A stretch of DNA of 64,000 nucleotides, from IMG/VR virus record IMGVR_UViG_3300031857_000005, positions 186,001 through 250,000 of that record. One strand, given 5' to 3'. Below are positions 24,682 to 37,813 of the stretch, piece by piece. Each line of letters begins with the position of its first letter. Positions within the stretch are counted from its first letter, which is position 1. The notes under the pieces are model-generated. The model made no database searches, was not told the origin of the DNA, and saw only the letters and a list, made by a program, of their open reading frames with translations. The translations under genes were made by a program, and so were the position numbers.

Positions 24682-27600
24682 ATGGCAACTAACAGTAAAG
24701 TATTTGTATCACCAGGTGTCTATACTTCAGAAGTTGATTTGAGTTTCGTTGCTCAAAGTGTGGGTGTTACCACATTGGGTATTGCGGGAGAGACTTTAAA
24801 AGGACCTGCATTCGAACCGATATTCATTAGAAACTTCGATGAATTCACGACATACTTCGGTGGTACTTCTCCTGAAAAATTTGTAAATACTCAAATTCCT
24901 AAATATGAAGCAGCATACATCGCAAAGGCGTATTTACAACAATCAAATCAATTATTTGTAACAAGAATCCTTGGATTATCGGGTTATGATGCGGGACCAT
25001 CTTGGTCAGTAGTTACAGTTGCAAATGTTGATCCAACGACTGTTGGGTTTGATTGTGCAAGTGGTGTAACCGTTGATTGTGTTTTTGAATGTACTTCAGC
25101 TAATACTATTGATTTTACGGTACCTTTTAGTGGATGTAACAGTACTGACGGGACAGTTAACTTTTTAAGTGATTTTCCTACAGTAATACAAAGTATGTTA
25201 ACAGAATCATACCAACAATTTGACGGAGGAACCTCATCAATAGATGCTGATATTACAAGTACAATTTTTAGTATTATCTCTTTAGATGATCCAACTACAG
25301 GACAGACAGTAATTGATTATTTTGGTTCTATTGATCCTGATGATTATTCAGGATTTACTAATCCTACTTTTTCTGCGGGAACTCAAAACAATAGATTTGA
25401 TGTACCTTCAGTTGATTTAGCTCAAACTGATTTAACATCACCATTAAATGATTCTTGGTATTACGCTTTATTTGATAATACAGGTAATGGTAATTACACA
25501 GGATTCTCATTTTACTCATATGTAACAGGAGTTACTGCAACTACAACAACAAGTAATTGTGCATCATTCTACGACTATTCAATTAGTGGAACATCCGCAA
25601 GTATAAACTATAATACTAATGTTATTAGTGTTTGTTTACCATCAGGGTTTACAGGTAATTTATCGGCATTAACTCCGACATTCAGTGCGTGTACAACAGG
25701 GGTTAGTGTTAATAGTGTTACACAGGTAAGTAATTCCACAGTGGTAAACTTCTCAGCAGGTACTGTGGAATATGTGTTAACATCGGGAGATGGATCAGTT
25801 ACAACAACTTGGACTGTAAATGTTTATGAATACGATCCTTGTTTAACTTGTCCTGGTTCTAACGGTGGATCACAAAATGTTGGTGAATTTACAACTTGTT
25901 ATTCAGGTAATGTCGTTGGTAAAATTTATCTTTACACAGGTAATTCATTCACTGATTACGATGATTTAGTCGTAACAACATTAAGATCAAGAGGTGTATC
26001 TAATTATACTGATGGAAATAACCCAACTTGGGAAGTGACAGGAATTACTGACGTAACTCTTGATATGACAGGACCTTATTCAGGGGTTTCTAAAAATCCT
26101 TATTTACCATTTGTGGTTAATGTTACCAACTACCAAGGAGATTCATTCTCGTTTGAAACATCAATGAGTATATCAGACGCTAAATATGTAACTAAAGTAT
26201 TTGGTACTAGTAATTTTGGTAAACCTAGAACAACAGTTCCATTAATGGTTGAGGAAAGATTCCAATCATTATTAAATTACGCATATAGAAAAGGTTATAT
26301 TAGAGGATTAAATTCTGAGTTAATTTCACTTGATTCCGCTCAAAGTCAAAGTTCTACATCTATTGGGTGGTACTTAGATAGATATCAATCACCAAGTTCC
26401 CCTTGGGTTGTATCCGAAGTAAGAGGTAGTAAAGTTTATAACTTATTCAAATTCTATACAATTGCTGACGGTAATGATGCAAACACAAGTGTAAAACTTT
26501 CAATTACAGATATTTCATTCGCTAATCAAACATTTACAGTGTTAGTTAGAGATTATTTTGATACAGATTCTGCACCTACAGTTCTTGAGAAATTCACTAA
26601 CTGTTCAATGGATCCAAGTCAAAATAGTTTTATTGCTAAAAAAATTGGTACATTAGATGGTGAATACGAATTGAACTCTAAATATGTTATGGTTGAAATG
26701 AATGAGGATGCTCCTATTGATTCACTACCTTGTGGATTTGAAGGGTTTAACTTCAGAGAGTACTCAGGTGCTAGATCTCCATTCCCAATCTTTAAAACAA
26801 AATACGATTTCCCTGGTGAAGTAATTTATAACCCACCATTTGGTTTACCAACAGGAGGAGATAACGCAACTACAACAGGTGGTGATAATGTTAGAAGAAC
26901 ATATTTGGGTATGTCTAATTTCTGGGGTTACGATCCTGACTTCTTTGAGTATGTTGGTAAAAGAAATCCAATTTCTACTTGCGACATTGAGGGAGGACAG
27001 TGGTCTTACAGAACAAGAGGATTCCACATGGATAAAAACGCAAGTGGTATTACTATCGGAAGTGCGTTCTCAACAAGTGGAACACCAAGATTCTATGTAG
27101 GTGATGCACCGTTTGCTTCAGAACCTATAAATGAAACAAGTCCTTACTACAGATTGTTCTCAAGAAAATTCACTTTGTTTGTACAAGGAGGGTTTGATGG
27201 ATGGGACATATATAGAGAAAGAAGAACAAATAGTGATAGATATGTTTTAGGTAGAATCGGATTCTTAAATGGTTCTTGTCCTACAGATAGATATCCTGAT
27301 GCTAAAGGATGGGGAGCGTTTAAACAAATTTCTATCGGTGACGGTACAAGAACTTGGGCAAATACTGACTACTACGCATATTTGTTGGGTATTAGAACAT
27401 TCTCTAACCCTGAAGCGGTAAACATTAATGTATTCGTAACTCCTGGTATTGATTATGTAAATAATTCAGACTTGGTTGGTGATGCGGTTGAGATGATTGA
27501 GTTTGAGAGAGCTGATTCATTGTATATTACAACAACACCTGACTACGATTTATTATTACCGACAACGACAGGAACTGATGGTTTAATCTATCCTACTGAA

Positions 27601-28254
27601 GCGGTTGATAATTTGGAGACTGCGGGAATTGACTCTAACTATACTTGTACTTACTATCCTTGGGTATTAACTCGTGATACTGTTAATAACACACAAATCT
27701 ATATCCCAGCAACAGCTGAGGTAACTAGAAACTTGGCGTTGACAGATAATATCGCATTCCCTTGGTTCGCCGCGGCGGGTTACACTCGTGGTATTGTTAA
27801 CTCAATCAAAGCTCGTAAGAAGTTGACTCAAGAAGATAGAGACACATTATATGTAGGTAGAATCAACCCAATCGCAACCTTCTCTGATGTTGGTACAGTA
27901 ATTTGGGGTAACAAAACTCTACAAGTTAGAGAGTCAGCACTTGACAGAATCAATGTTAGACGATTGTTACTACAAGCTCGTAAATTGATTTCAGCGGTTT
28001 CTGTGAGATTGTTGTTCGATCAAAACGATGAACAAGTTAGACAAGACTTCTTAAATGCGGTTAACCCTATCTTGGATTCAATCAGAAGAGACAGAGGTTT
28101 ATATGATTTCCGTGTGACAGTTTCAAGTGATACTGCAGACTTAGATAGAAATCAGTTAACAGGTAAGATTTATGTGAAACCTACTCGTTCACTTGAATTT
28201 ATTGATATCACATTCTACATTACCCCAACAGGAGCGTCGTTTGAGAATATCTAA
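24682..28254 (+). CDS. tail sheath protein (T4 gp18-like) with a large insertion
   Basis: FVSPGVYTSEVD; PWFAAAGYTRG; RINPIATF; WGNKTL; RINVRRLL; PTRSLEFIDITF. Confidence 0.95.
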   Translation: MATNSKVFVSPGVYTSEVDLSFVAQSVGVTTLGIAGETLKGPAFEPIFIRNFDEFTTYFGGTSPEKFVNTQIPKYEAAYIAKAYLQQSNQLFVTRILGLSGYDAGPSWSVVTVANVDPTTVGFDCASGVTVDCVFECTSANTIDFTVPFSGCNSTDGTVNFLSDFPTVIQSMLTESYQQFDGGTSSIDADITSTIFSIISLDDPTTGQTVIDYFGSIDPDDYSGFTNPTFSAGTQNNRFDVPSVDLAQTDLTSPLNDSWYYALFDNTGNGNYTGFSFYSYVTGVTATTTTSNCASFYDYSISGTSASINYNTNVISVCLPSGFTGNLSALTPTFSACTTGVSVNSVTQVSNSTVVNFSAGTVEYVLTSGDGSVTTTWTVNVYEYDPCLTCPGSNGGSQNVGEFTTCYSGNVVGKIYLYTGNSFTDYDDLVVTTLRSRGVSNYTDGNNPTWEVTGITDVTLDMTGPYSGVSKNPYLPFVVNVTNYQGDSFSFETSMSISDAKYVTKVFGTSNFGKPRTTVPLMVEERFQSLLNYAYRKGYIRGLNSELISLDSAQSQSSTSIGWYLDRYQSPSSPWVVSEVRGSKVYNLFKFYTIADGNDANTSVKLSITDISFANQTFTVLVRDYFDTDSAPTVLEKFTNCSMDPSQNSFIAKKIGTLDGEYELNSKYVMVEMNEDAPIDSLPCGFEGFNFREYSGARSPFPIFKTKYDFPGEVIYNPPFGLPTGGDNATTTGGDNVRRTYLGMSNFWGYDPDFFEYVGKRNPISTCDIEGGQWSYRTRGFHMDKNASGITIGSAFSTSGTPRFYVGDAPFASEPINETSPYYRLFSRKFTLFVQGGFDGWDIYRERRTNSDRYVLGRIGFLNGSCPTDRYPDAKGWGAFKQISIGDGTRTWANTDYYAYLLGIRTFSNPEAVNINVFVTPGIDYVNNSDLVGDAVEMIEFERADSLYITTTPDYDLLLPTTTGTDGLIYPTEAVDNLETAGIDSNYTCTYYPWVLTRDTVNNTQIYIPATAEVTRNLALTDNIAFPWFAAAGYTRGIVNSIKARKKLTQEDRDTLYVGRINPIATFSDVGTVIWGNKTLQVRESALDRINVRRLLLQARKLISAVSVRLLFDQNDEQVRQDFLNAVNPILDSIRRDRGLYDFRVTVSSDTADLDRNQLTGKIYVKPTRSLEFIDITFYITPTGASFENI

Positions 28255-29285: not shown

Positions 29286-29774
29286 ATGGCTGATTTGTTA
29301 ATGAAAATGCCAGTTCCTTACGAACCGAAAAGACAGAACCGATTTATATTAAGATTCCCATCTTCATTGGGTATAAATGAGTGGTTTGTAGAGAGTGCGT
29401 CTAGACCATCTATCAAAATCGGTTCAACTGAGATACAGTTCTTAAATACTTCAACATTCGTTGCAGGTAGATTCAACTGGGATCCAATTACAGTTAAATT
29501 CCGTGACCCTATCGGACCATCTGCATCACAAGCATTAATGGAGTGGGTTCGTTTATGTGCGGAGTCTGTAACAGGTCGTATGGGTTATGCTGCTGGTTAC
29601 AAAAAGAATGTTGACATTGAGATGTTAGATCCAACAGGTGTTGTTGTTGAGAAGTGGATTTTGGAAGGTACATTTATGACTGATGTAAACTTTGGTTCAT
29701 TGTCTTATTCACAAGATGCGTTGGCAGATATTTCGGCAACACTTCGTATGGATCGTTGTATCCTTGTGTACTAA
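29286..29774 (+). CDS. tail tube protein (T4 gp19-like)
   Basis: EPKRQNRF, AGRFNWDPITV.FRD, GYAAGYKK, L.MD motifs; follows sheath. Confidence 0.9.
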   Translation: MADLLMKMPVPYEPKRQNRFILRFPSSLGINEWFVESASRPSIKIGSTEIQFLNTSTFVAGRFNWDPITVKFRDPIGPSASQALMEWVRLCAESVTGRMGYAAGYKKNVDIEMLDPTGVVVEKWILEGTFMTDVNFGSLSYSQDALADISATLRMDRCILVY

Positions 29775-29796: not shown

Positions 29797-29830
29797 ATCC
29801 CATATGGTTTATTCCGTATGGGATTTTTAT
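29797..29830 (+). terminator. intrinsic terminator after the tube gene
   Basis: ATCCCATATGG-loop-CCGTATGGGAT followed by T tract. Confidence 0.8.
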
Positions 29831-29873
29831 TTACAAAAAATATAAGTAAAGTATCTTTATAATAAAAAAGATT

Positions 29874-30638
29874 ATGGAAAACAATGTTGCACAATATGGA
29901 CAAATGGATTTTAACTTACCACACGATGTGGTTAAATTACCATCAGGAGGAATTTTTTATAAATCTAAAAAGAAGAGTGTTAAAGTTGGTTATTTAACTG
30001 CGTCTGACGAAAACATTTTGTCAAATATTAATCCTAATAAATCAATTAGGGAAAGTATTATTCTACCTTTATTAAGAAATAAAATTTACGAACCTGATTT
30101 AAGACCTGATGAATTATTAGATGGTGATATTGAAGCGTTAATGATATTTTTAAGGAACACTTCATTTGGACCTGAATATAACATATCAATAAAGGATCCT
30201 GCAACAAACAAAGGATTTGAAACAACTATTTTATTAGATGAATTAAACATTAAAAAAACAGATGTTGATCCTGATGAAAATGGGTATGTTACAACAACAT
30301 TACCAAGAAGCGGTAATTCCGTTAAACTTAAATTTTTAAATGTTAGAGATTTAATTGAAATTGAAGAAATTATTGATCAATACCCTGCAGGTAGAATACC
30401 ACCGTCACAAACAATTAGATTGAATAAAATGATTGTTTCCATTGACGGAAATGAAGATAGAAGTCACATTTCTAAGTTTATTGAGTCAATGCCAATTATG
30501 GATTCAAAACATATTAAAAAGTTTGTTTTAGATAATGAACCAAGATTAGACTTAACAAAACAAGTAATAGCCCCGTCAGGAGAAAAGGTAATGGTTAACA
30601 TTGCGTTTGGGGTTGAATTTTTTCGGCCTTTTTTCTGA
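29874..30638 (+). CDS. baseplate hub / tail assembly chaperone (T4 gp26-like)
   Basis: V.LPS.G.FY, TASDE.IL, L..GD..A.M..LR..SFG.EY, IPFG/IAFGVEFF-type C-terminus; lies between tube and tape measure. Confidence 0.75.
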   Translation: MENNVAQYGQMDFNLPHDVVKLPSGGIFYKSKKKSVKVGYLTASDENILSNINPNKSIRESIILPLLRNKIYEPDLRPDELLDGDIEALMIFLRNTSFGPEYNISIKDPATNKGFETTILLDELNIKKTDVDPDENGYVTTTLPRSGNSVKLKFLNVRDLIEIEEIIDQYPAGRIPPSQTIRLNKMIVSIDGNEDRSHISKFIESMPIMDSKHIKKFVLDNEPRLDLTKQVIAPSGEKVMVNIAFGVEFFRPFF

Positions 30639-30777
30639 TTACACAAAAATTTTACTTGACGAATATTATATCCTTGCAAAAATTCTGAGAACATCATATT
30701 CAGACTTTCTATCTATGCCAACATATATCCGAAGATATTTAATTAATAAAATTATTGAGGAACATAAAAGTGAATAA
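30619..30777 (+). CDS. start-less +1-frame extension of the chaperone (T4 gp51-like / GT-type tail chaperone domain)
   Basis: Frame open 30592-30774: FFGLFSDYTKILLDEYYILAKILRTSYSDFLSMPTYIRRYLINKIIEEHKSE; not in the ORF track; fills the gap exactly up to the next late motif. Confidence 0.7.
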   Translation, partial: FFGLFSDYTKILLDEYYILAKILRTSYSDFLSMPTYIRRYLINKIIEEHKSE

Positions 30778-30805: not shown

Positions 30806-32638
30806 ATGTTAGCAACAAACGATTCTGGTGATGTAGATAAAGAAGAAACAGGTGCGGGTAGTTACGGGTTTACAGGTATTGATGTTGCCACACAATTATC
30901 TACTGCCGCCAAAGATTTATCAGGAATACCTGCTCAAATAGGTTCGTTAATTAGTACTAATTTAGGTTTAACTGCAATGTTTAGAGCAGCAACTGACTTA
31001 GATAAAAAGAGTGCGGATATCGTAAAAACATTAGGGACTGGATTCGAAAGAAGTATAGAACTTCAAAGAACTCTCACACTTGCAATCCCACAATTTGTTG
31101 GGATGGGTTTGAAGGCGGATGATGCATCTGCTCTTTATGAAAACCTAATTAAAAAATTCAATATTAATTTAAAACTAAGTGACAAACAATTAGTTGAGTT
31201 GGCGGCGACAAGTAAAGTTACTGGTGTTGCGGCTGATGAATTAGCACTTAATTTTAAAGATGTTGGTTTTAGTATTGAATCTGTTGGTGACAATATGTTG
31301 GAGGTTGCAAAAATTGCTAATCAAGCGGGGGTTACCGTCGCTAGTGTTGCGGGTGCGGTAAGTAAAAACCTTGAAAAACTTAATTTGTTTAATTTTGATA
31401 ATGGTGTTAAAGGACTTGCTAAAATGGCGGCGCAAGCATCAAGATTAGGTGTTGATATGGAAAAAATATTTGCCAAATCTGAAGACCTATTAAGTCCCGA
31501 AAAAGCAATTGATTTCGCAGCATCATTACAAAGATTAGGAGTCACCTCAAGTGAGTTATTAGATCCGTTAAGAGCAATGGATTTGGCTCAAAATGATCCT
31601 GTTGAGTTACAAAATCAAATTGTTAATTTAAGTAAAGATTTTGTTAGATTTAATGAACAAAATAATCAATTTGAAATTTTACCTGGTGCAAAAAGGAGAA
31701 TGAGGGAAGTTGCGACTGAATTAGGTATGTCTGCGGCTGAATTCTCAAAAATGGCAATCAACGCCGCATCATTTGATGAAAAATTAAAAAAGATTAAATT
31801 TAGTCCTGAAGTAAATGAAGACGATAGAGAATTGGTGGCGACAATGGCTCAGTTTAGTAAAAGTGGCGTTGCTCAGGTTAAAGTTAAAACATTTGATGAA
31901 ACAACAGGTAAATTAACAGGTGACGAAGAATTAGTTGATGTTAGTAAATTAACTGCGGAACAAATAGAATCACTTAAGGCGGAACAAGCATTACAAGGTA
32001 AAACCATGGAAGAAATTGCGGTTGATCAATTAAGTGAAATGTCAAAAACAAATGCAATACTTAATGAGAGATTGGCAGCGTATCAATATGGTATGGCACA
32101 AGGAGCTGCTCAACCTATTTATAGCGGTGCATTATCTAAAACAAGAGATCTTGTAAAAGAACTCCCAACCGACCCTATGGTTTATATTAAAACCATAGAA
32201 GATGTTGAAAAAAAAGTGGGAGAAATATTAAAAGATTTAGGTGTTGATTTTGGAGTTGTAATTGAAGAATTTGGGAAGGCTAAAGATGTTGTATATAATT
32301 GGTTTAGTGATGCTGCAACAACTATTAAAGATATTTATAATTCTGTTATTGGTACAACAACTTCCTCCGCAACATCAACTGCAACACCATCGGCATCAAA
32401 TGTGGTATCATCAACTGCAACAACAACAGTAGGTGGAGGAGGTACTGAAACCGCCTCAACCAATACACAACCAACAAATATGAACATAACCCACACATTT
32501 AATTTTTCAAATATGCCAAGTTATGTAACATCAACTGAGGTTGAACGAATATTAAAAGAATATACTCAAAATTCTCAAAATGCTCTTGCAATGGTAATGG
32601 CGGCAGGAAAAATAAATGCCGGATTAACAACAACATAA
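30806..32638 (+). CDS. tape measure protein (T4 gp29-like size)
   Basis: Ala/Leu-rich helical 610-aa protein directly after the chaperone pair. Confidence 0.75.
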   Translation: MLATNDSGDVDKEETGAGSYGFTGIDVATQLSTAAKDLSGIPAQIGSLISTNLGLTAMFRAATDLDKKSADIVKTLGTGFERSIELQRTLTLAIPQFVGMGLKADDASALYENLIKKFNINLKLSDKQLVELAATSKVTGVAADELALNFKDVGFSIESVGDNMLEVAKIANQAGVTVASVAGAVSKNLEKLNLFNFDNGVKGLAKMAAQASRLGVDMEKIFAKSEDLLSPEKAIDFAASLQRLGVTSSELLDPLRAMDLAQNDPVELQNQIVNLSKDFVRFNEQNNQFEILPGAKRRMREVATELGMSAAEFSKMAINAASFDEKLKKIKFSPEVNEDDRELVATMAQFSKSGVAQVKVKTFDETTGKLTGDEELVDVSKLTAEQIESLKAEQALQGKTMEEIAVDQLSEMSKTNAILNERLAAYQYGMAQGAAQPIYSGALSKTRDLVKELPTDPMVYIKTIEDVEKKVGEILKDLGVDFGVVIEEFGKAKDVVYNWFSDAATTIKDIYNSVIGTTTSSATSTATPSASNVVSSTATTTVGGGGTETASTNTQPTNMNITHTFNFSNMPSYVTSTEVERILKEYTQNSQNALAMVMAAGKINAGLTTT

Positions 32639-32674: not shown

Positions 32675-35600
32675 ATGTCAGAGAGTGTATTATCATTTGC
32701 ATCGTCATCTACATTTAGAAATACTTTAATTGCTAGAAATTTAGCACCTTATCAAGTACAAGGTGTGTACACACCTCCTGCAGGTAATGTAACATATGAA
32801 GTATCACCACTTAGTAACAGTAATGTAATTGATTCACCTGATACATTAATATCTACAAATCAAGGTGCTAATCAACTTTATTCATTAAATGAATACGGAC
32901 CTGAAGGTGGTTTCATTGGTAAATATACTATACCTGGAGCTCCATATCCCGTTGAATCAAATAAAGGACCTTATGACCCAGGAGACACAATTTTAGATTT
33001 GGTTAATGAATTCTATATTGATGCGGCATATATACAAAATAAATACGGACCTGAGAGTGGGTTTAAAGATTTATATGTTATTACAGATGTAATCACATCA
33101 AATAAGATGTACCAACCTTATTGGGATCCATCAATATTTGTACCATCATTTTATAGTCCGTATGAGATATTAACAAGTACCAACCCAACAGGATCTGATG
33201 GTTCTTTATCACAAGATTCGTATTTAGCTAAGATTGGTGCGGCACAACTTAAAGGATATTTTGAAGATAGAATTGCATCAGAGTTAGAACAGTTAACAAT
33301 AGGTTCTATTAACCTTGATACATTATCTGATCCATTTAGTGCGAGTTTATTAGCATCAGGACAACAACCATTCTTTATTAAGAATTGGAAAATTACTGTA
33401 CCTGAAAATCCTTTATTAGCTGCGGTATCGTTTGCAAATAGATTATCAGGAACTTATTTTCCTGTATCATTTATTCCTGGTGATTATTTTGATGAAAACA
33501 ATCCTGAAGGTAATGTATCGGGAGCATTAAATACCGCAAACAATTTAACGGCAGGTGCATTAGGTGGAATTTTAAATAAATTTAGAAATCCTTCTGAATT
33601 ATTTTTGGCAAATACAGGTAATGGACAACAATCAGTTTTATTTGGTAACTTAAATTATAACTTATATAGACCTGTATATCAAAAAAATCTAATACAAGGA
33701 GCGTCACAAGCAATTAATAACCTATTCAACGGGGATAACGGTGGAGGAGGTTATTATATCGGTAGTGAAAATGCGGAACCTGGATTAATAACAAACCCAT
33801 CTAATGAGGTTGCAACCGATAGATTTGGTAAACAACAAGGAACACTTGTTTATGGACCTGACGAGTTAGGTAAATTGTATGAAGGTAATGATGGTAAACT
33901 TAATTTTGGATTAGGTGGTAAATCACATCACGATGGTGATGGTATAGATGGTAGATTCGTTTGGACATCACCAAAGTATAGACCAAATGCGGGATTCAAA
34001 GTAGGTAGAGGTGGAGAAACCTTCCAACAGGACGCTGAATTTAATATTGTTGAGGCTCAATACAGTCAAGATCAATCAATTGATGTTGAATTTAAGGGGG
34101 GTTCTATATTAGATAATACGCAAAGAATTATTAATGCTGCCGATAATGTTCAAGGGGCAAAACGACTTAAACACGTCGGTAACGCAATAAATCAAGTGTC
34201 AAAAGTTTTTAATGATGGTTATAAAGAATTAACAAAAGGTTCTCAAGTAATTGCATATTACGACTCAAGTACAGGTAGTAATGTAATTGGTGAAAGTGGA
34301 TTTGAAGTTGGTAGAGAATATTGTAGAATCTTCCAAAAAGATACTCCATATTACACTTACGCTGATTTACAAAAAACTGATGGTATAACTACTTCAGGTA
34401 GAAGATTTAATAATTCAGTATTTGATAATACTTACAATTTAAATATTGCACCTTTAAGAAACCCTGGATCAACTAACATTGTTGATAATAAAGTGAAAAA
34501 ATATATGTTCTCACTTGAAAATTTAGCTTGGAGAACATCAAGTGAACCTGGGTTTAGATATGATGATTTACCTGTTTGTGAGAAAGGACCGAATGGTGGT
34601 AGAATTATGTGGTTTCCACCATATAATATAACATTCAGTGAAGACAGTAAGGCAGGTTGGAACCCTACATCATTTTTAGGTAGACCTGAACCAATATATA
34701 CATATAAAGATAGTACAAGAACGGGTTCATTAAGTTGGACAATAATTGTGGATCATCCATCAGTTATGAATACAATTATTAGAGAACAACTTAAAACTAG
34801 AACACCACAAGAAATTAATTCAATAATGGATTCATTTTTTGCGGGTTGTGTTAAATATGACATATATGATTTGGCAATAAAGTTTAATAACATACCAACA
34901 TCTGATTTATATACATACCAACAACTTTTAAATGAACCAAGAAAAACTCAAGAAGAACTTCAAAATATATTAACAAAAATCCCAGTCGACAATTCAATAC
35001 CTGGGGGTAATAGTACAGGTACTCAAGGAGATGCTGAGGTTAGTCAAACAACTAACACCACAAATGATGTTAAACCCGGACCTACAGTTGAAGAGGTTGT
35101 TACTTCTTCAGAACTTAATGATAATTTTTCAGAATATGCGTTTTATTTTGAAAACGATTCACCATATTTTAATAATCCAATAAAAAATCCTTCAGATCCT
35201 GCGGAATGGAAAGTTGCGGGTGCGGCATCAAGAGATTTCCCTAATTTAGGTAATAATGCAAATTGGGATTATGATAATTATTACGATTTTTATATAGGTT
35301 TAAGAAATCAAAAATATGTAACTAATGCACCTGCAAAATGTTTTGCTCAAGGACAAACTGATCCTTTCTTAAAGGAAGGAGTACAAAACTTTTTTGATAA
35401 TGTTGTTGTGGACAATTTTAGTGTAATTAAAAATGAGTTATTACCAAAAATTAAAGAATTTATTGTTGACAAAAAAGGACAAATAACAATTGAATTAGTT
35501 GGTTCAGCATCACCAATACAAGCTAGTTTACAATATAATGAATATCTTTCTGATAGAAGAATTGATTCTGTTGTAAAATGGTTTAAAAAACAAAATGTTG

Positions 35601-37813
35601 CTGGAGAAAATTTCCAAAAGTTTTTTGATGAAGGAAAATTAATTGTTAAATCAGCATCTTTAGGTGAAGTTGCTCAAGTTTCACCAAAAAGTAAAGATGG
35701 TACAAATTTCTCAATAAACTGTAATGTAAACATACTTGATGGAGCTACTTTAGCAACTGCTAAGACTAATGATTATGGTGGTGAATGGTATTCAGTACCC
35801 GCAATGGCTTGTAGAAAAGTTAGAATTGCGTCAATAATTGCAACATATGTACAAGAAGTTAAACCTGAAGATCCAATTCAAGAACCAATAATAGATGTTG
35901 TTGTGATACCTAATCAGTCAGGAACAACAGGAACAACAACTATTGAAATACCTCCACTTAAAATTATAGAACAACCAGATCCGATTCAAAAGGTTAAAGA
36001 CGGTATTTCCAAAAAAATATTAAGACATCTATTTTCTGAATGTGATTATTTTGATGTGTTAAAAGAAAGTGATCCTATGGTATTTGAAAGTATTAAAGAT
36101 AGGATAAAATACTTTACACCGGCATTTCACTCAATAACACCTGAAGGATTAAATGCAAGACTTACATTCTTACAACAATGTATGAGACCGGGACAAACAA
36201 TTCCTGTTATTGGACCTGATGGTAAACCAAAATATAATGATGCTCAAAATACTGCGTTTGGAGCACCACCTGTATTGGTATTAAGAATTGGTGATTTTTA
36301 TCACACAAAAATAATTCCTAATACATTAGGTATACAATATGATCCTTTGGTTTTTGATATAAATCCTGAAGGAATTGGGGTACAACCAATGTTAGCCAAA
36401 ATTTCATTAGGATTTGACTTTATTGGTGGACATGGATTAGCTGGACCAGTTAAACAATTACAGAACGCATTATCATTCAATTACTATGCGAATACTGAAA
36501 TATATGATGAAAGATCAGTTGCAACAGAAAGTACAGAAGAAAGAGATAAACAAATGGTTGCTAAAATAGTTAAAGGTGCGGGAACATCAACACCTACGGT
36601 TGGATCTAATACGGTTGCTAACCAACAATCACAAAAAGGTGGAGGAACTATTGGAACTATATTGTCAACAAACTACGAAAATAATAATGAAGTTGAAGTT
36701 GGTGACATGGACTATTCAGGATTAATTAAAGAATTATCTGAAGGGACTAAAAATTATTTTACAACAATAACAAATCAACTTAAAACAATGACAAGTACAA
36801 CTAATATGGGTATTGTCGGATTAGCAAGTAGTGAAAGAAAATTTAATAATGGTGAGTTAAATGAATATGATGTACCATTACCTGATGTTCCATTGTATGG
36901 TAGATCATTAGAAATTGAAAAAAATGTAAGTAAATTAATTAAAGAAACATTATCAGATGTTAAAAATGATAAGGATCCAATTTCATATTATGTTAATAAG
37001 GATTCTAACCAATATAGTGCGGTAAATTCTGAGTTAAGAGAATTAAGAGCAAAATTAGAAGAAGAGGTAACCAAAATGGAAACTGAAATAAATAATATTG
37101 TTATTGAACCTGCTAACACAATGACTTCATATCAAGAAAACTATAATTATACTTTAAGAAAAATGGATATGATTTGTGGTAAAATTGATGGTATCAAATT
37201 AGGTACCGGAGATTACAAAGTTTACACATTAAGTGGTGACAACATTGATAATATTATTAAAGTATATACCACTAATACAAATCCTGTTTCCGTAGGATTT
37301 AAATTAACGGATTATAATAATAAAATATTAGATGTTGATTCTAATAGTATCTTAAAAAAGATTAACTATCAGGATAATAATTTTGATCCAATAACTAAAG
37401 TTTTCTCTGGTTTTGGTGATGATACGGCAACTAGAAGGTTCTATATGACTATGTCCCCAATATTTTTGGATGATAATAAATTTAACGCTTTTGTCACTAA
37501 TTTAACTTCTGGGCCTAAAATATCTAAAAATCAAAAATTAATTGATGGTATTAAAAAAATATCAAATGAATTTAAAGGGAAATGTAAAGAAGAATATGAT
37601 GCCGAATTAAAATTCTTTGATACTTTAATGAATGGTAGTGATTATCAAACATATGAAAAATATGAGATAACTGAATTTGATTCCAAAGTACAATACACAA
37701 CGGATAATGTTGGTAACAACCTACAAAAGAAGAATAGATTAAAAGATTTGTATTTAGATGTAAATGTAAAAACAAGTAATAAAACTTATAATGGAAAAGT
37801 AACTTTCACTTAA
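32675..37813 (+). CDS. large baseplate/tail-tube-initiator-like virion protein with an OmpA-like domain
   Basis: gp48/gp54-like segment WFPPYNITFSE...W.P...LGRPEPIYTY...RTGSLSW; OmpA-like IELVGSAS...YNEYLSDRRIDSV. Confidence 0.6.
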   Translation: MSESVLSFASSSTFRNTLIARNLAPYQVQGVYTPPAGNVTYEVSPLSNSNVIDSPDTLISTNQGANQLYSLNEYGPEGGFIGKYTIPGAPYPVESNKGPYDPGDTILDLVNEFYIDAAYIQNKYGPESGFKDLYVITDVITSNKMYQPYWDPSIFVPSFYSPYEILTSTNPTGSDGSLSQDSYLAKIGAAQLKGYFEDRIASELEQLTIGSINLDTLSDPFSASLLASGQQPFFIKNWKITVPENPLLAAVSFANRLSGTYFPVSFIPGDYFDENNPEGNVSGALNTANNLTAGALGGILNKFRNPSELFLANTGNGQQSVLFGNLNYNLYRPVYQKNLIQGASQAINNLFNGDNGGGGYYIGSENAEPGLITNPSNEVATDRFGKQQGTLVYGPDELGKLYEGNDGKLNFGLGGKSHHDGDGIDGRFVWTSPKYRPNAGFKVGRGGETFQQDAEFNIVEAQYSQDQSIDVEFKGGSILDNTQRIINAADNVQGAKRLKHVGNAINQVSKVFNDGYKELTKGSQVIAYYDSSTGSNVIGESGFEVGREYCRIFQKDTPYYTYADLQKTDGITTSGRRFNNSVFDNTYNLNIAPLRNPGSTNIVDNKVKKYMFSLENLAWRTSSEPGFRYDDLPVCEKGPNGGRIMWFPPYNITFSEDSKAGWNPTSFLGRPEPIYTYKDSTRTGSLSWTIIVDHPSVMNTIIREQLKTRTPQEINSIMDSFFAGCVKYDIYDLAIKFNNIPTSDLYTYQQLLNEPRKTQEELQNILTKIPVDNSIPGGNSTGTQGDAEVSQTTNTTNDVKPGPTVEEVVTSSELNDNFSEYAFYFENDSPYFNNPIKNPSDPAEWKVAGAASRDFPNLGNNANWDYDNYYDFYIGLRNQKYVTNAPAKCFAQGQTDPFLKEGVQNFFDNVVVDNFSVIKNELLPKIKEFIVDKKGQITIELVGSASPIQASLQYNEYLSDRRIDSVVKWFKKQNVAGENFQKFFDEGKLIVKSASLGEVAQVSPKSKDGTNFSINCNVNILDGATLATAKTNDYGGEWYSVPAMACRKVRIASIIATYVQEVKPEDPIQEPIIDVVVIPNQSGTTGTTTIEIPPLKIIEQPDPIQKVKDGISKKILRHLFSECDYFDVLKESDPMVFESIKDRIKYFTPAFHSITPEGLNARLTFLQQCMRPGQTIPVIGPDGKPKYNDAQNTAFGAPPVLVLRIGDFYHTKIIPNTLGIQYDPLVFDINPEGIGVQPMLAKISLGFDFIGGHGLAGPVKQLQNALSFNYYANTEIYDERSVATESTEERDKQMVAKIVKGAGTSTPTVGSNTVANQQSQKGGGTIGTILSTNYENNNEVEVGDMDYSGLIKELSEGTKNYFTTITNQLKTMTSTTNMGIVGLASSERKFNNGELNEYDVPLPDVPLYGRSLEIEKNVSKLIKETLSDVKNDKDPISYYVNKDSNQYSAVNSELRELRAKLEEEVTKMETEINNIVIEPANTMTSYQENYNYTLRKMDMICGKIDGIKLGTGDYKVYTLSGDNIDNIIKVYTTNTNPVSVGFKLTDYNNKILDVDSNSILKKINYQDNNFDPITKVFSGFGDDTATRRFYMTMSPIFLDDNKFNAFVTNLTSGPKISKNQKLIDGIKKISNEFKGKCKEEYDAELKFFDTLMNGSDYQTYEKYEITEFDSKVQYTTDNVGNNLQKKNRLKDLYLDVNVKTSNKTYNGKVTFT

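What the first reader, a model, noticed from the sequence alone, without database searches (positions are those of the whole stretch)
30592..30777. Probable programmed +1 (or -2) frameshift joining a gp26-like chaperone to a hidden gp51/GT-like domain
Seen: frame 0 ends GAA TTT TTT CGG CCT TTT TTC TGA (EFFRPFF*). The +1 frame reads TTT TTC GGC CTT TTT TCT GAT... for 52 codons with a chaperone-like motif (YSDFLSMPTYIRRYLI), has no suitable ATG, and ends just before the tape-measure promoter. Two six-U runs (30618-30623, 30629-30634) allow tRNA-Phe slippage; the second abuts a UGA pause. Established: tail chaperone frameshifts upstream of tape measure genes are -1 in lambda and -2 in Mu, while T4 gp26 and gp51 are separate genes. 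A non -1 recoding in a T4-like myovirus is notable. The -1 frame closes quickly. A TTG start at 30601-30613 is the alternative.
Basis: partly seen in the sequence, partly recalled or inferred. Interest (0 to 1): 0.7.

Follow-up and report, generated by a model that had tools for sequence, protein, structure and literature searches.

The report
Plus-one frameshift in tail chaperone gene
A giant lake phage very probably makes a short and a long version of its tail-assembly helper protein from one gene, by letting some ribosomes slip one base forward at a UUU-CGG site; phage T4 encodes the same two forms as separate genes, 26 and 51, whose roles are still unclear.

Summary
ORF 29874-30638 (254 aa, Pfam T4_baseplate, the gp26/gp51 family) ends EFFRPFF*. 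The +1 frame is open from 30592 to 30777.

All 80 related metagenomic loci (62-100% protein identity) keep GAR TTT TTT CG(G/C) CCT. In the 79 sequences whose tail is complete (78 loci plus the window) a 48-52 codon +1 tail follows. Its substitution pattern is protein-coding in the +1 frame.

CGG at 30624 is one of only two in-frame CGG codons among about 18,000 window codons. The site is therefore the classic +1 type: P-site UUU re-pairs on UUC while the A site waits for a rare codon. A conserved hairpin (30570-30613) lies just upstream. The second U-run is not conserved.

The tail looks like Pfam Gp51_C, the C-terminal domain of T4 gp51. T4 gp51 is T4_baseplate plus Gp51_C; T4 gp26 is T4_baseplate alone. 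One frameshifted gene here therefore yields a gp26-like and a gp51-like product.

The gene lies between the tail tube gene and the tape-measure position. Its model's best structural matches are tail assembly chaperones.

I read it as a +1 variant of the lambda G/GT system. No product has been observed. Independent TTG initiation is the main rival.

The parts
29286..29774 (+). Tail tube gene (gp19-like, 162 aa), directly upstream of the chaperone gene.
   Evidence: phrog_4542 tail tube protein, E 3e-27. PF06841 Phage_T4_gp19, E 3.2e-5, 24.2 bits, below the 28.2-bit cut-off.
29874..30638 (+). Zero-frame product: 254-aa gp26-like protein (Pfam T4_baseplate) ending EFFRPFF*.
   Evidence: PF12322, E 5e-10, 39.9 bits against a 24.5-bit cut-off; phrog_150 baseplate hub, E 8e-14. 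AF2 model with pLDDT 84.8. The best VIA-align matches to residues about 132-231 are tail assembly chaperones, Z 5.1-5.2.
30570..30613 (+). Conserved RNA hairpin just 5' of the shift site. The basal helix is GCCCCG/UGGGGU and there is an inner helix. It is a candidate stimulator of forward slippage.
   Evidence: 95.1% of cells are paired, against 39-58% when partners are slid. 24 cells carry compensatory changes, against 7 +/- 2 in shuffles (0 of 500 shuffles reach this). The C at the third position of GCC never varies.
30618..30626 (+). Shift site UUU UUU CGG. The P-site codon is UUU (30621-30623). The A-site codon is the rare CGG (30624-30626). After the slip, C30624 is the third base of the re-paired UUC (30622-30624) and GGC at 30625 is decoded next.
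   Evidence: TTTTTTCG(G/C) is invariant in 80 loci plus the window. CGG occurs twice in 18,044 codons of long ORFs, and one of the two is here. UUU_Ynn is a known +1-prone site (PMC5009743).
30625..30777 (+). +1-frame extension of 50 codons plus stop. It is Gp51_C-like: GLFSDY...MPTYIRRYLINKIIEEHKSE.
   Evidence: 40 distinct versions are conserved as protein (A3). Entropy by +1 codon position is 0.70/0.42/1.11. 59 of the 100 nearest Atlas clusters are in the PF28602 Gp51_C set. hhalign against the gp51 C-terminus gives P 2.7e-4.
29874..30777 (+). Predicted trans-frame product of 300 aa: 29874-30623 joined to 30625-30774. This is the gp51-like long form.
   Evidence: Virtual translation P0121. 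The junction ...GVEFF|GLF... falls at the same point as the VF|KLL continuation in T4 gp51.
30806..32638 (+). 610-aa ORF in the tape-measure position. It starts 28 nt after the +1 stop.
   Evidence: Position only. The downstream gene is annotated as tape measure in Listeria phage LIS04 and Bacillus phage HSE3. No family hit, and no similarity to T4 gp29.

Best explanation
The gene at 29874-30638 is the tail assembly chaperone of this roughly 300-kb myovirus, and it is decoded in two ways.

Most ribosomes read frame 0 to the UGA at 30636. They make a 254-aa gp26-like protein.

A fraction stall with tRNA-Phe on UUU (30621-30623) while the A site waits for the very rare CGG. [quoted passage not shown] This gives a 300-aa protein: the same T4_baseplate domain plus a 50-residue Gp51_C-like tail.

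A conserved hairpin that ends 4 nt before the U-run probably helps by re-folding behind the ribosome.

By analogy with lambda G/GT, both forms would coat the tape-measure protein made from the next gene. The rare long form would use its extra domain to recruit tube subunits or hub parts. Neither form should remain in the virion.

Shown here: the frames, the conservation, the coding signature, the codon rarity, the domain identities and the synteny. Inferred: the slippage itself, its efficiency, the role of the hairpin and the binding partners.
For: Shift site. It is invariant in 80 loci at 62-100% protein identity, including synonymous positions. Mean entropy is 0.10 bits over -9..+20, against 0.93 bits at upstream third positions. 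Six of 10 third positions are invariant there, against 4 of 47 upstream (Fisher P 9e-4). CGG is 2 of 585 Arg codons and 2 of 18,044 codons in the window; the variant codon CGC occurs 3 times. The review PMC5009743 states that UUU_Ynn is especially +1-prone in bacteria, and that influenza PA-X uses UCC_UUU_CGU.

Coding signature. Codon periodicity switches from frame 0 to frame +1 right after the stop. The tail peptide exists in 40 distinct conserved versions.

No start of its own. Of 81 database ORFs that match the tail profile, among 1.84 billion proteins, all but one spurious 985-aa hit are short (24-158 aa). Their starts are inconsistent, and many begin inside the domain. In the window, 36 of 38 genes start at ATG in A/T-rich, SD-free leaders, whereas the candidate TTGs sit in a G-rich conserved hairpin.

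Distant relatives. Mel-JY01, Streptococcus GXN1, Listeria LIS04, Bacillus SP-15 and HSE3, and L099 have the same layout (tube, T4_baseplate gene, +1 overlap after EFF or NFF, tape measure), always with TTT as the second Phe codon. Ralstonia RsoM2USA has a tail in the -1 frame, with a similar motif by eye, behind a canonical T_TTT_TTT slippery site.

Link to T4. T4 gp26 is PF12322 only. T4 gp51 is PF12322 plus PF28602. The tail's Atlas neighbours are Gp51_C clusters.

Gene count. The complete 304-kb relative that carries the identical gene has only one PF12322 gene.

Fold. The three best of 48,161 PDB chains are 3fgx, 3klu (YqbN) and 2ob9 (HK97 tail assembly chaperone).
Against: No protein, ribosome-profiling or RNA data exist. 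Only DNA contigs could be laid on the region.

Dual coding alone forces [CT]GG in frame 0 if the +1 frame needs F-G. The rare codon could therefore be a by-product.

A TTG lies 3-8 codons upstream of the U-run in nearly every locus, so initiation or re-initiation there is not excluded.

In one lineage (L100) the same tail domain is a free-standing 109-aa protein with its own ATG. Fusion is therefore not obligatory for function.

No robust natural in-frame fusion was found outside the T4 gp51 family.

Sequence support for tail = Gp51_C is mixed. hhalign gives P 2.7e-4 to 2.3e-3. hmmsearch of the tail profile against gp51 sequences gives no signal. The PF28602 model itself was not in the local Pfam copy.

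A fold Z of about 5 is modest.

The hairpin's basal helix would have to be melted while the ribosome sits on the site.
Confidence: 0.75

Rival explanations
1. The +1 ORF is a separate small gene of about 55-58 aa. It would be initiated at one of the TTG codons (30601, 30607 or 30613), perhaps by ribosomes that terminate at 30636 and re-initiate a short way back. This would give a free Gp51_C-like protein that works beside the gp26-like protein.
For: A TTG is available within the short +1 open stretch in almost all loci. GenBank annotates the Mel-JY01 ORF from such a TTG. Locus L100 encodes the domain as an independent 109-aa protein with its own ATG, 2 nt after the stop of the PF12322 gene. 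Dual coding would also explain the invariant synonymous sites from TTG onward.
Against: No TTG position is conserved across families. The conserved TTG (TTT GGG read in +1) is missing in L073 and L075. Database ORF calls start at many different places. In the window, 36 of 38 genes use ATG in A/T-rich leaders, while these TTGs lie inside a G-rich conserved stem. In the SD-dependent Firmicute phages no start with a properly spaced SD precedes the conserved part of the tail. T4 gp51 carries the domain fused to T4_baseplate, and the junction falls at the same FF point. The invariant C at the third position of GCC, at the 5' end of the CCCC arm of the hairpin, lies where the +1 frame is closed, so dual coding cannot explain it.
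Confidence: 0.13
2. RNA polymerase slippage on the T6 run (30618-30623) drops one U in a fraction of transcripts. Standard translation of those mRNAs then yields the same fusion.
For: A homopolymer is present: T6 here, and T7 in Mel-JY01 and L099. Transcriptional slippage is a known route to two products (PMC5009743).
Against: Six T is short for efficient slippage, by general knowledge. Relatives with the same architecture read TTC TTT CGT and have no homopolymer (GXN1 and HSE3). The rare A-site codon and the UUU-to-UUC re-pairing would then be unexplained coincidences. No indel at the run is seen in any contig, although contigs hide rare variants.
Confidence: 0.05
3. The shift is -2 rather than +1. 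tRNA-Phe slips back two bases on the U6 run, which gives EFFFGL... with one extra Phe.
For: U6 allows perfect re-pairing two bases back, and the target frame is the same.
Against: It is not possible in relatives with UUC UUU CGU, where the codon two bases back would be UCU. The +1 shift explains every +1-frame lineage except the wobble mismatch in LIS04, UUU_A. A rare A-site codon is the hallmark of +1 events (PMC10885494).
Confidence: 0.05

Closest known systems
Lambda gpG / gpGT tail assembly chaperone frameshift (Levin 1993; Xu, Hendrix and Duda 2004, 2013, 2014, as summarised in PMC5009743)
   Same: The gene lies between the tail tube gene and the tape-measure gene. There is a short product and a rarer C-terminally extended product with the same N-terminal part. 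The second frame has no start of its own. The slippery run is conserved. The model of the zero-frame protein matches the HK97 chaperone fold best.
   Different: The direction is +1, not -1. The site is UUU_CGG with a hungry codon, not G_GGA_AAG. The protein belongs to Pfam T4_baseplate and is about twice as long as gpG. No known chaperone Pfam family matches. The candidate stimulator is a 5' hairpin. The binding partners are untested.
[quoted passage not shown]
   Same: The T4_baseplate domain is the same in both. gp51 adds a Gp51_C domain right after the conserved F-F / V-F motif, which is where the +1 tail joins here. gp51 is absent from the finished particle.
   Different: T4 uses two separate, divergently transcribed paralogous genes and no recoding. 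Gene 26 ends EFFELL* at the start of gene 25. The T4 genes are not next to the tube gene. T4 gene 26 also has an internal start, 26'.
UUU_Ynn and UUU_CGN +1 frameshift sites (E. coli UUU-pyrimidine sites, Yersinia YopN-TyeA, influenza A PA-X UCC_UUU_CGU)
   Same: The P-site codon is UUU, which re-pairs one base forward. The A-site codon is slowly decoded, CGN or UGG. Relatives GXN1 and HSE3 even read UUC_UUU_CGU.
   Different: This is a different biological system. The efficiency and any need for the upstream hairpin are unknown here.
[quoted passage not shown]
   Same: These are also forward frameshifts that give C-terminally extended structural or assembly proteins. HSTV-2 is a myovirus chaperone case.
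   Different: PSA shifts on a proline codon next to a stop or a pseudoknot, and in genes for virion proteins. HSTV-2 belongs to an unrelated chaperone family and has an archaeal host.

Membership tests
Pfam PF12322 T4_baseplate (T4 gp26 / gp51 family) | The HMM score is above the curated gathering cut-off. | tested here: met
   39.9 bits against a 24.5-bit cut-off, E 5e-10, residues 30-241. BFVD fold hits are baseplate hub and hub assembly proteins, E down to 1e-31.
Pfam PF28602 Gp51_C (C-terminal domain of T4 gp51) | The +1 tail matches the family model. | tested here: inconclusive
   The model is absent from the local Pfam copy, so T4 gp51 itself shows no second hit. Indirect evidence is as follows. 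59 of the 100 nearest Atlas clusters are in the Gp51_C set, with scores of 0.93 and 0.92 and 199 and 193 shared features. hhalign gives P 2.7e-4 against the gp51 C-terminus. hmmsearch of the tail profile against 92 gp51 sequences does no better than controls.
G/GT-type frameshifted tail assembly chaperone | The gene lies between the major tail or tube gene and the tape-measure gene. | tested here: met
   The order is tube 29286-29774, chaperone 29874-30638, then the 610-aa ORF from 30806. The order is the same, with annotated tape-measure genes, in LIS04 and HSE3.
G/GT-type frameshifted tail assembly chaperone | There is an overlapping second frame without its own conserved start, reached at a conserved slippery site. 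| tested here: met
   A -1 version exists in RsoM2USA.
G/GT-type frameshifted tail assembly chaperone | The protein has the tail assembly chaperone fold. | tested here: inconclusive
   The top three of 48,161 chains are 3fgx, 3klu (YqbN) and 2ob9 (HK97 chaperone), Z 5.1-5.2, covering 84-90 residues. The next unrelated hit has Z 3.3. Foldseek gives 2ob9 a probability of 0.63 but E 0.74. Z below 8 is not proof.
G/GT-type frameshifted tail assembly chaperone | Both products are made at a fixed ratio, bind the tape measure, and are absent from virions. | not testable with these tools
   This needs expression, mass spectrometry and binding assays. Complex prediction of the tube protein with the tail gave no verdict.
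Hungry-codon +1 ribosomal frameshift site | The P-site tRNA can re-pair in the +1 frame, and the zero-frame A-site codon is rare. | tested here: met
   UUU goes to UUC. CGG occurs at 0.1 per 1000 codons and is the rarest Arg codon.

The most novel reading that the evidence does not exclude
The Pfam T4_baseplate family, annotated everywhere as 'baseplate hub', is really the tail assembly chaperone of T4-type contractile tails. T4 genes 26 and 51 would then be the duplicated, unfused descendants or equivalents of a single frameshifted G/GT-like gene. gp26 would be the abundant tape-measure coat. gp51, through Gp51_C, would be the rare adaptor that brings tube or hub subunits to gp29. Many large myoviruses, from hosts in Bacteroidota-like, cyanobacterial and Firmicute lineages, would still use the one-gene form, with a conserved UUU_N +1 shift.
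Probability: 0.45. Interest if true: 0.75.

Novelty: new variant of a known kind. Interest (0 to 1): 0.62.

Why it matters
Programmed frameshifting in tail chaperone genes is well known. It is described mainly as a -1 event in lambda-like chaperone families, and T4-type phages have been treated as lacking it.

Here the same two-product logic appears in the T4 gp26/gp51 family. It uses a textbook +1 site, and it is conserved over hundreds of environmental phage contigs and several cultured phages.

[quoted passage not shown] It also explains why T4 carries two paralogues.

It exposes a systematic annotation gap. Gene callers either miss the tail or call it as a small orphan ORF with arbitrary starts.

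My literature searches found no paper that links gp51 to frameshifting. The library is incomplete, so prior description elsewhere cannot be excluded.

Tried and rejected
- Complex prediction of the tube protein (29286-29771) with the 50-aa tail gave no answer (score 0.00). It counts neither for nor against binding.
- In-frame natural fusions. The search for homologous proteins on residues 240-300 of the virtual product found nothing. The profile search found one apparent read-through (P0277, on the 963-nt Tara scaffold L091). There the stretch just upstream is 1 nt shorter and the normal frame-0 ending FGVDFFRPFYGL* is still intact. It is probably an indel error, so I did not use it as evidence.
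- hhalign of the narrow tail alignment against gp51 was not significant. hhalign of the whole virtual products against gp51 was also uninformative. Only a broadened tail profile gave P of about 1e-3 to 3e-4. hmmsearch gave nothing.
- Pfam and PHROGs scans of the tails gave no hit.
- blastn against cultured phages gave no match.
- The 610-aa ORF showed no similarity to T4 gp29 or to NCBIfam.
- Sequencing runs: only DNA contigs were available and no usable RNA, so expression and slippage could not be seen.
- Tenacibaculum phages pT24 and PTm1 have fold-level relatives of 297-306 aa in BFVD. They gave no sequence match with PF12322, A5 or A3, so I could not check whether they are in-frame fusions.
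- An SD-like role for the invariant GGGG was considered. The spacing, 8 nt before the P-site codon, is unlike prfB, and the window's genes do not use SD. I prefer the hairpin reading.
- The second U-run next to UGA was rejected as a signal because it is not conserved.
Full report
THE OBSERVATION

ORF 29874-30638 (254 aa) ends GAA TTT TTT CGG CCT TTT TTC TGA. The +1 frame is open from 30592 to the TAA at 30775-30777. The only start codons before the U-run are TTG at 30601, 30607 and 30613. The -1 frame closes 50 nt after the stop.

The gene order is:
- a very large tail sheath gene (24682-28254);
- a 299-aa ORF;
- the tail tube gene (29286-29774; phrog_4542, E 3e-27);
- the 254-aa ORF;
- the +1 ORF;
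- a 610-aa ORF that starts 28 nt later (30806);
- a 1712-aa ORF.

The 254-aa protein is a member of Pfam PF12322 T4_baseplate (39.9 bits, cut-off 24.5) and of phrog_150 'baseplate hub'.

IS IT MORE THAN CHANCE?

A scan of IMG/VR gave 360 related stretches. I kept 80 loci with 62-100% protein identity. The large protein collection holds more than 5,000 relatives.

- Every one of the 80 loci contains GAR TTT TTT CG(G/C) CC exactly once.
- In every locus that reaches far enough, the +1 frame stays open for 127-145 nt beyond the zero-frame stop. The -1 frame closes after 5-56 nt.
- The +1 peptide exists in 40 distinct versions of 48-52 residues. L2, E13, Y25, P32, R36 and K42 are invariant, and the substitutions elsewhere are conservative.
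- Across 53 distinct sequences, mean entropy by codon position is 0.43/0.35/0.93 bits in frame 0 upstream of the site. Downstream it is 0.70/0.42/1.11 in the +1 frame. The coding register therefore switches at the junction.
- The 30 nt around the site (-9 to +20) have a mean entropy of 0.10 bits. Six of 10 synonymous third positions are invariant there, against 4 of 47 upstream (P 9e-4).
- When contigs of four lake metagenome runs are laid on the gene, the depth from diverged relatives peaks on 30594-30638. No contig shows an indel in the U-run.
- The window's second U-run (30629-30634) is TTTCTT in the relatives, so it is not part of the signal.

THE SHIFT SITE

The +1 geometry requires one base to be skipped. 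With UUU (30621-30623) in the P site, tRNA-Phe can re-pair on UUC (30622-24). The next codon is then GGC.

The zero-frame A-site codon CGG is the rarest Arg codon in the window. It occurs 2 times in 585 Arg codons and 18,044 codons overall, and one of the two is this one. The CGC seen in six relatives occurs 3 times.

This is the established +1 recipe. [quoted passage not shown] It is the likely YopN-TyeA site, and influenza PA-X uses UCC_UUU_CGU (PMC5009743).

There is a caveat. If the +1 frame must read F-G, frame 0 is forced to [CT]GG, so the rarity could be partly a by-product of dual coding.

AN UPSTREAM HAIRPIN

RNAalifold on 39 distinct sequences predicts a hairpin at 30570-30613. Its basal helix is GCCCCG/UGGGGU, and it has an inner helix.

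On the named structure, 95.1% of cells pair, against 39-58% when partners are slid. 24 cells carry double-sided changes, against 7 +/- 2 in shuffles (0 of 500 shuffles reach this). The CCCC arm begins with the invariant third-position C of the codon GCC, at a place where the +1 frame is closed. Dual coding therefore cannot explain that invariance.

The hairpin ends 4 nt before the U-run. I infer, without having shown it, that it re-folds behind the ribosome and favours forward movement. The PRFect paper describes upstream hairpins as nudging elements (PMC10885494).

A Shine-Dalgarno-like role for GGGG seems less likely. Only 2 of 38 window genes have any SD-like motif, and all 38 start at ATG in A/T-rich leaders.

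THE RIVAL: INDEPENDENT INITIATION

A TTG is present a few codons upstream in nearly all loci, so it cannot be excluded by sequence alone. Four observations argue against it:
- No TTG position is conserved. The TTT GGG-derived one is lost in L073 and L075.
- The TTGs lie in the G-rich stem, unlike every normal start in this phage.
- A profile of the tail was searched against 1.84 billion representative proteins. It found 81 hits, all short (24-158 aa) except one spurious 985-aa protein. Their starts are scattered from 26 residues upstream to 28 residues inside the domain. The gene was not called at all on the contig I inspected.
- In SD-dependent Firmicute phages there is no properly spaced SD plus start before the conserved part of the tail.

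On the other side, locus L100 encodes the domain as a free-standing 109-aa protein with its own ATG, right after a PF12322 gene that ends AEFFFPKG*. A free tail domain can therefore be functional.

DISTANT RELATIVES

tblastn found the family in cultured phages. Five of them show the order sheath, tube, T4_baseplate gene, a +1 overlapping ORF that begins after EFF or NFF, then the tape-measure gene. The second Phe codon is always TTT:

| Phage | Sequence at the site |
|---|---|
| Microcystis phage Mel-JY01 | AAC TTT TTT TGG CCT |
| Streptococcus phage GXN1 | GAA TTC TTT CGT |
| Listeria phage LIS04 | GAG TTT TTT AGT |
| Bacillus phage SP-15 | GAA TTT TTT CAC |
| Bacillus phage HSE3 | GAG TTC TTT CGT |

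The Mel-JY01 tail ends MPIMLRRYYIKKIIEYKK, against MPTYIRRYLINKIIEEHK in the window. A metagenomic relative (L099) reads NFFWPEI* with TTT TTT TGG.

Ralstonia phage RsoM2USA has a tail in the -1 frame, with a similar motif by eye, behind GTT TTT TTT TCC, a canonical U_UUU_UUU site.

Using either direction to reach the same kind of extension is typical of G/GT systems. The TTC TTT CGT variants argue against transcriptional slippage and against a -2 shift as the general mechanism.

WHAT THE TWO PRODUCTS ARE

T4 gp26 (208 aa) is PF12322 only. It ends EFFELL* at the start codon of gene 25, with no room for a tail.

T4 gp51 (249 aa) is PF12322 (E 3.9e-52) plus a C-terminal domain that the protein collection annotates as PF28602. 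The Atlas names this domain Gp51_C.

The evidence that links the window's 50-aa tail to Gp51_C is as follows:
- 59 of its 100 nearest Atlas clusters fall in the Gp51_C set. The top scores are 0.93 and 0.92, with 199 and 193 of 256 features shared.
- A broadened tail profile aligns with the gp51 C-terminus over 41 columns. P is 2.7e-4, or 2.3e-3 against full-length gp51.
- hmmsearch shows nothing, so the homology is likely but not proven.
- In gp51 the domain follows the V-F motif, which aligns with the F-F of gp26 and of the window protein. That is exactly where the frames join here.

The CheckV-complete 304-kb relative that carries the identical gene has a single PF12322 gene, while T4 has two. 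One frameshifted gene here therefore corresponds to T4's gp26 plus gp51.

IS IT A TAIL ASSEMBLY CHAPERONE?

The position, between the tube gene and the tape-measure slot, is the canonical one.

An AlphaFold2 model of the zero-frame protein (pLDDT 84.8) was compared with 48,161 PDB chains. The three best matches are 3fgx, 3klu (B. subtilis YqbN) and 2ob9 (HK97 tail assembly chaperone). They have Z 5.1-5.2 over model residues about 132-231 and cover most of each target. Next come 5ir0 and 3pes (a phage YuA protein) at 4.2 and 4.0, and unrelated folds begin at 3.3. From memory, YqbN belongs to the XkdN-like chaperone family.

Foldseek alone gave 2ob9 the only sizeable probability (0.63), but a non-significant E-value. 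This is suggestive rather than conclusive.

The T4 tail review lists gp26 and gp51 as hub assembly chaperones. It notes that gp51 is required but absent from the particle, and calls it of unknown function (PMC3004832).

The lambda model is that G and the G part of GT coat the tape measure, while the T part recruits the tube protein (PMC5009743). This is the mechanism I propose by analogy. The binding steps are inference. A complex prediction of the tail with the tube protein gave no verdict.

VERDICT

It is best described as a +1 variant of the G/GT tail chaperone frameshift, found in the T4 gp26/gp51 protein family.

It also suggests that T4's two enigmatic hub 'catalysts' are the unfused equivalents of such a pair. 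That idea is testable and, as far as my searches reach, undescribed.

My confidence is about 0.75 that a ribosomal +1 shift makes the long form. Separate initiation is the main alternative.

Noticed in passing
window 29797-29834: A terminator-like hairpin (11 pairs) followed by a T-run lies between the tube gene and the chaperone gene. Bacillus phage SP-15 has an annotated rho-independent terminator at the same place. This suggests attenuation, so that the tube protein is made in excess over the chaperone and the tape measure.
   Followed up: partly
window, 38 ORF starts: Genes start at ATG behind A/T-rich leaders. Only 2 of 38 have any Shine-Dalgarno-like motif, and GC content is 31%. This pattern is typical of phages of SD-independent hosts such as Bacteroidota. 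The host was not determined.
   Followed up: partly
window 29874-30638 (protein residues 22-46 and 143-160): The gp26-like protein carries two similar LP(S/R)(G/S)G...V(K)..(Y/F)L(T/N)..D motifs. hhalign aligned residues 140-160 with the N-terminus of gp51 (residues 6-24). Only the C-terminal half matched the chaperone fold. The T4_baseplate domain may be an internal duplication.
   Followed up: no
L100:512-1623: In one lineage the Gp51_C-like domain is a separate, non-overlapping 109-aa gene with its own ATG, 2 nt after the stop of the PF12322 gene. It carries an extra N-terminal part of about 45 aa that ends in GFF. This is a third architecture, besides the frameshift and the T4-type paralogue.
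   Followed up: partly
L085:3723-3998 (Ralstonia phage RsoM2USA): A tail with a similar motif (by eye) is reached in the -1 frame, behind GTT TTT TTT TCC. GenBank leaves a 1.4-kb stretch without annotation after the hypothetical protein, so the tail ORF and perhaps more are missing from the record.
   Followed up: partly
L091:356-832: A 963-nt Tara Oceans scaffold reads the chaperone domain and the tail in one frame, because a stretch 10-30 nt upstream of the U-run is 1 nt shorter. The normal zero-frame ending is still intact, so an assembly indel is likely. A genuine fused variant is possible.
   Followed up: partly
window 30609-30640: In the window only, GGGGTTGAA / TTCGGCCTT plus the second T-run scores as an intrinsic-terminator-like element with the slippery run in its loop. 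Relatives lack the T-tail, so it is probably incidental.
   Followed up: no
window 24682-28254 and 32675-37813: The tail sheath protein is unusually long (1190 aa), with a Thr/Ser/Cys-rich insertion. The gene after the tape-measure candidate encodes 1712 aa and has no family hit.
   Followed up: no
window 30625-30774 (Atlas rank 83): Among the tail's language-model neighbours is a cluster of phage P2 GpE proteins, the P2 frameshifted tail chaperone, with a score of 0.89. That is below the level to trust, but it is an interesting lead for a deep link between Gp51_C and classical chaperone parts.
   Followed up: no
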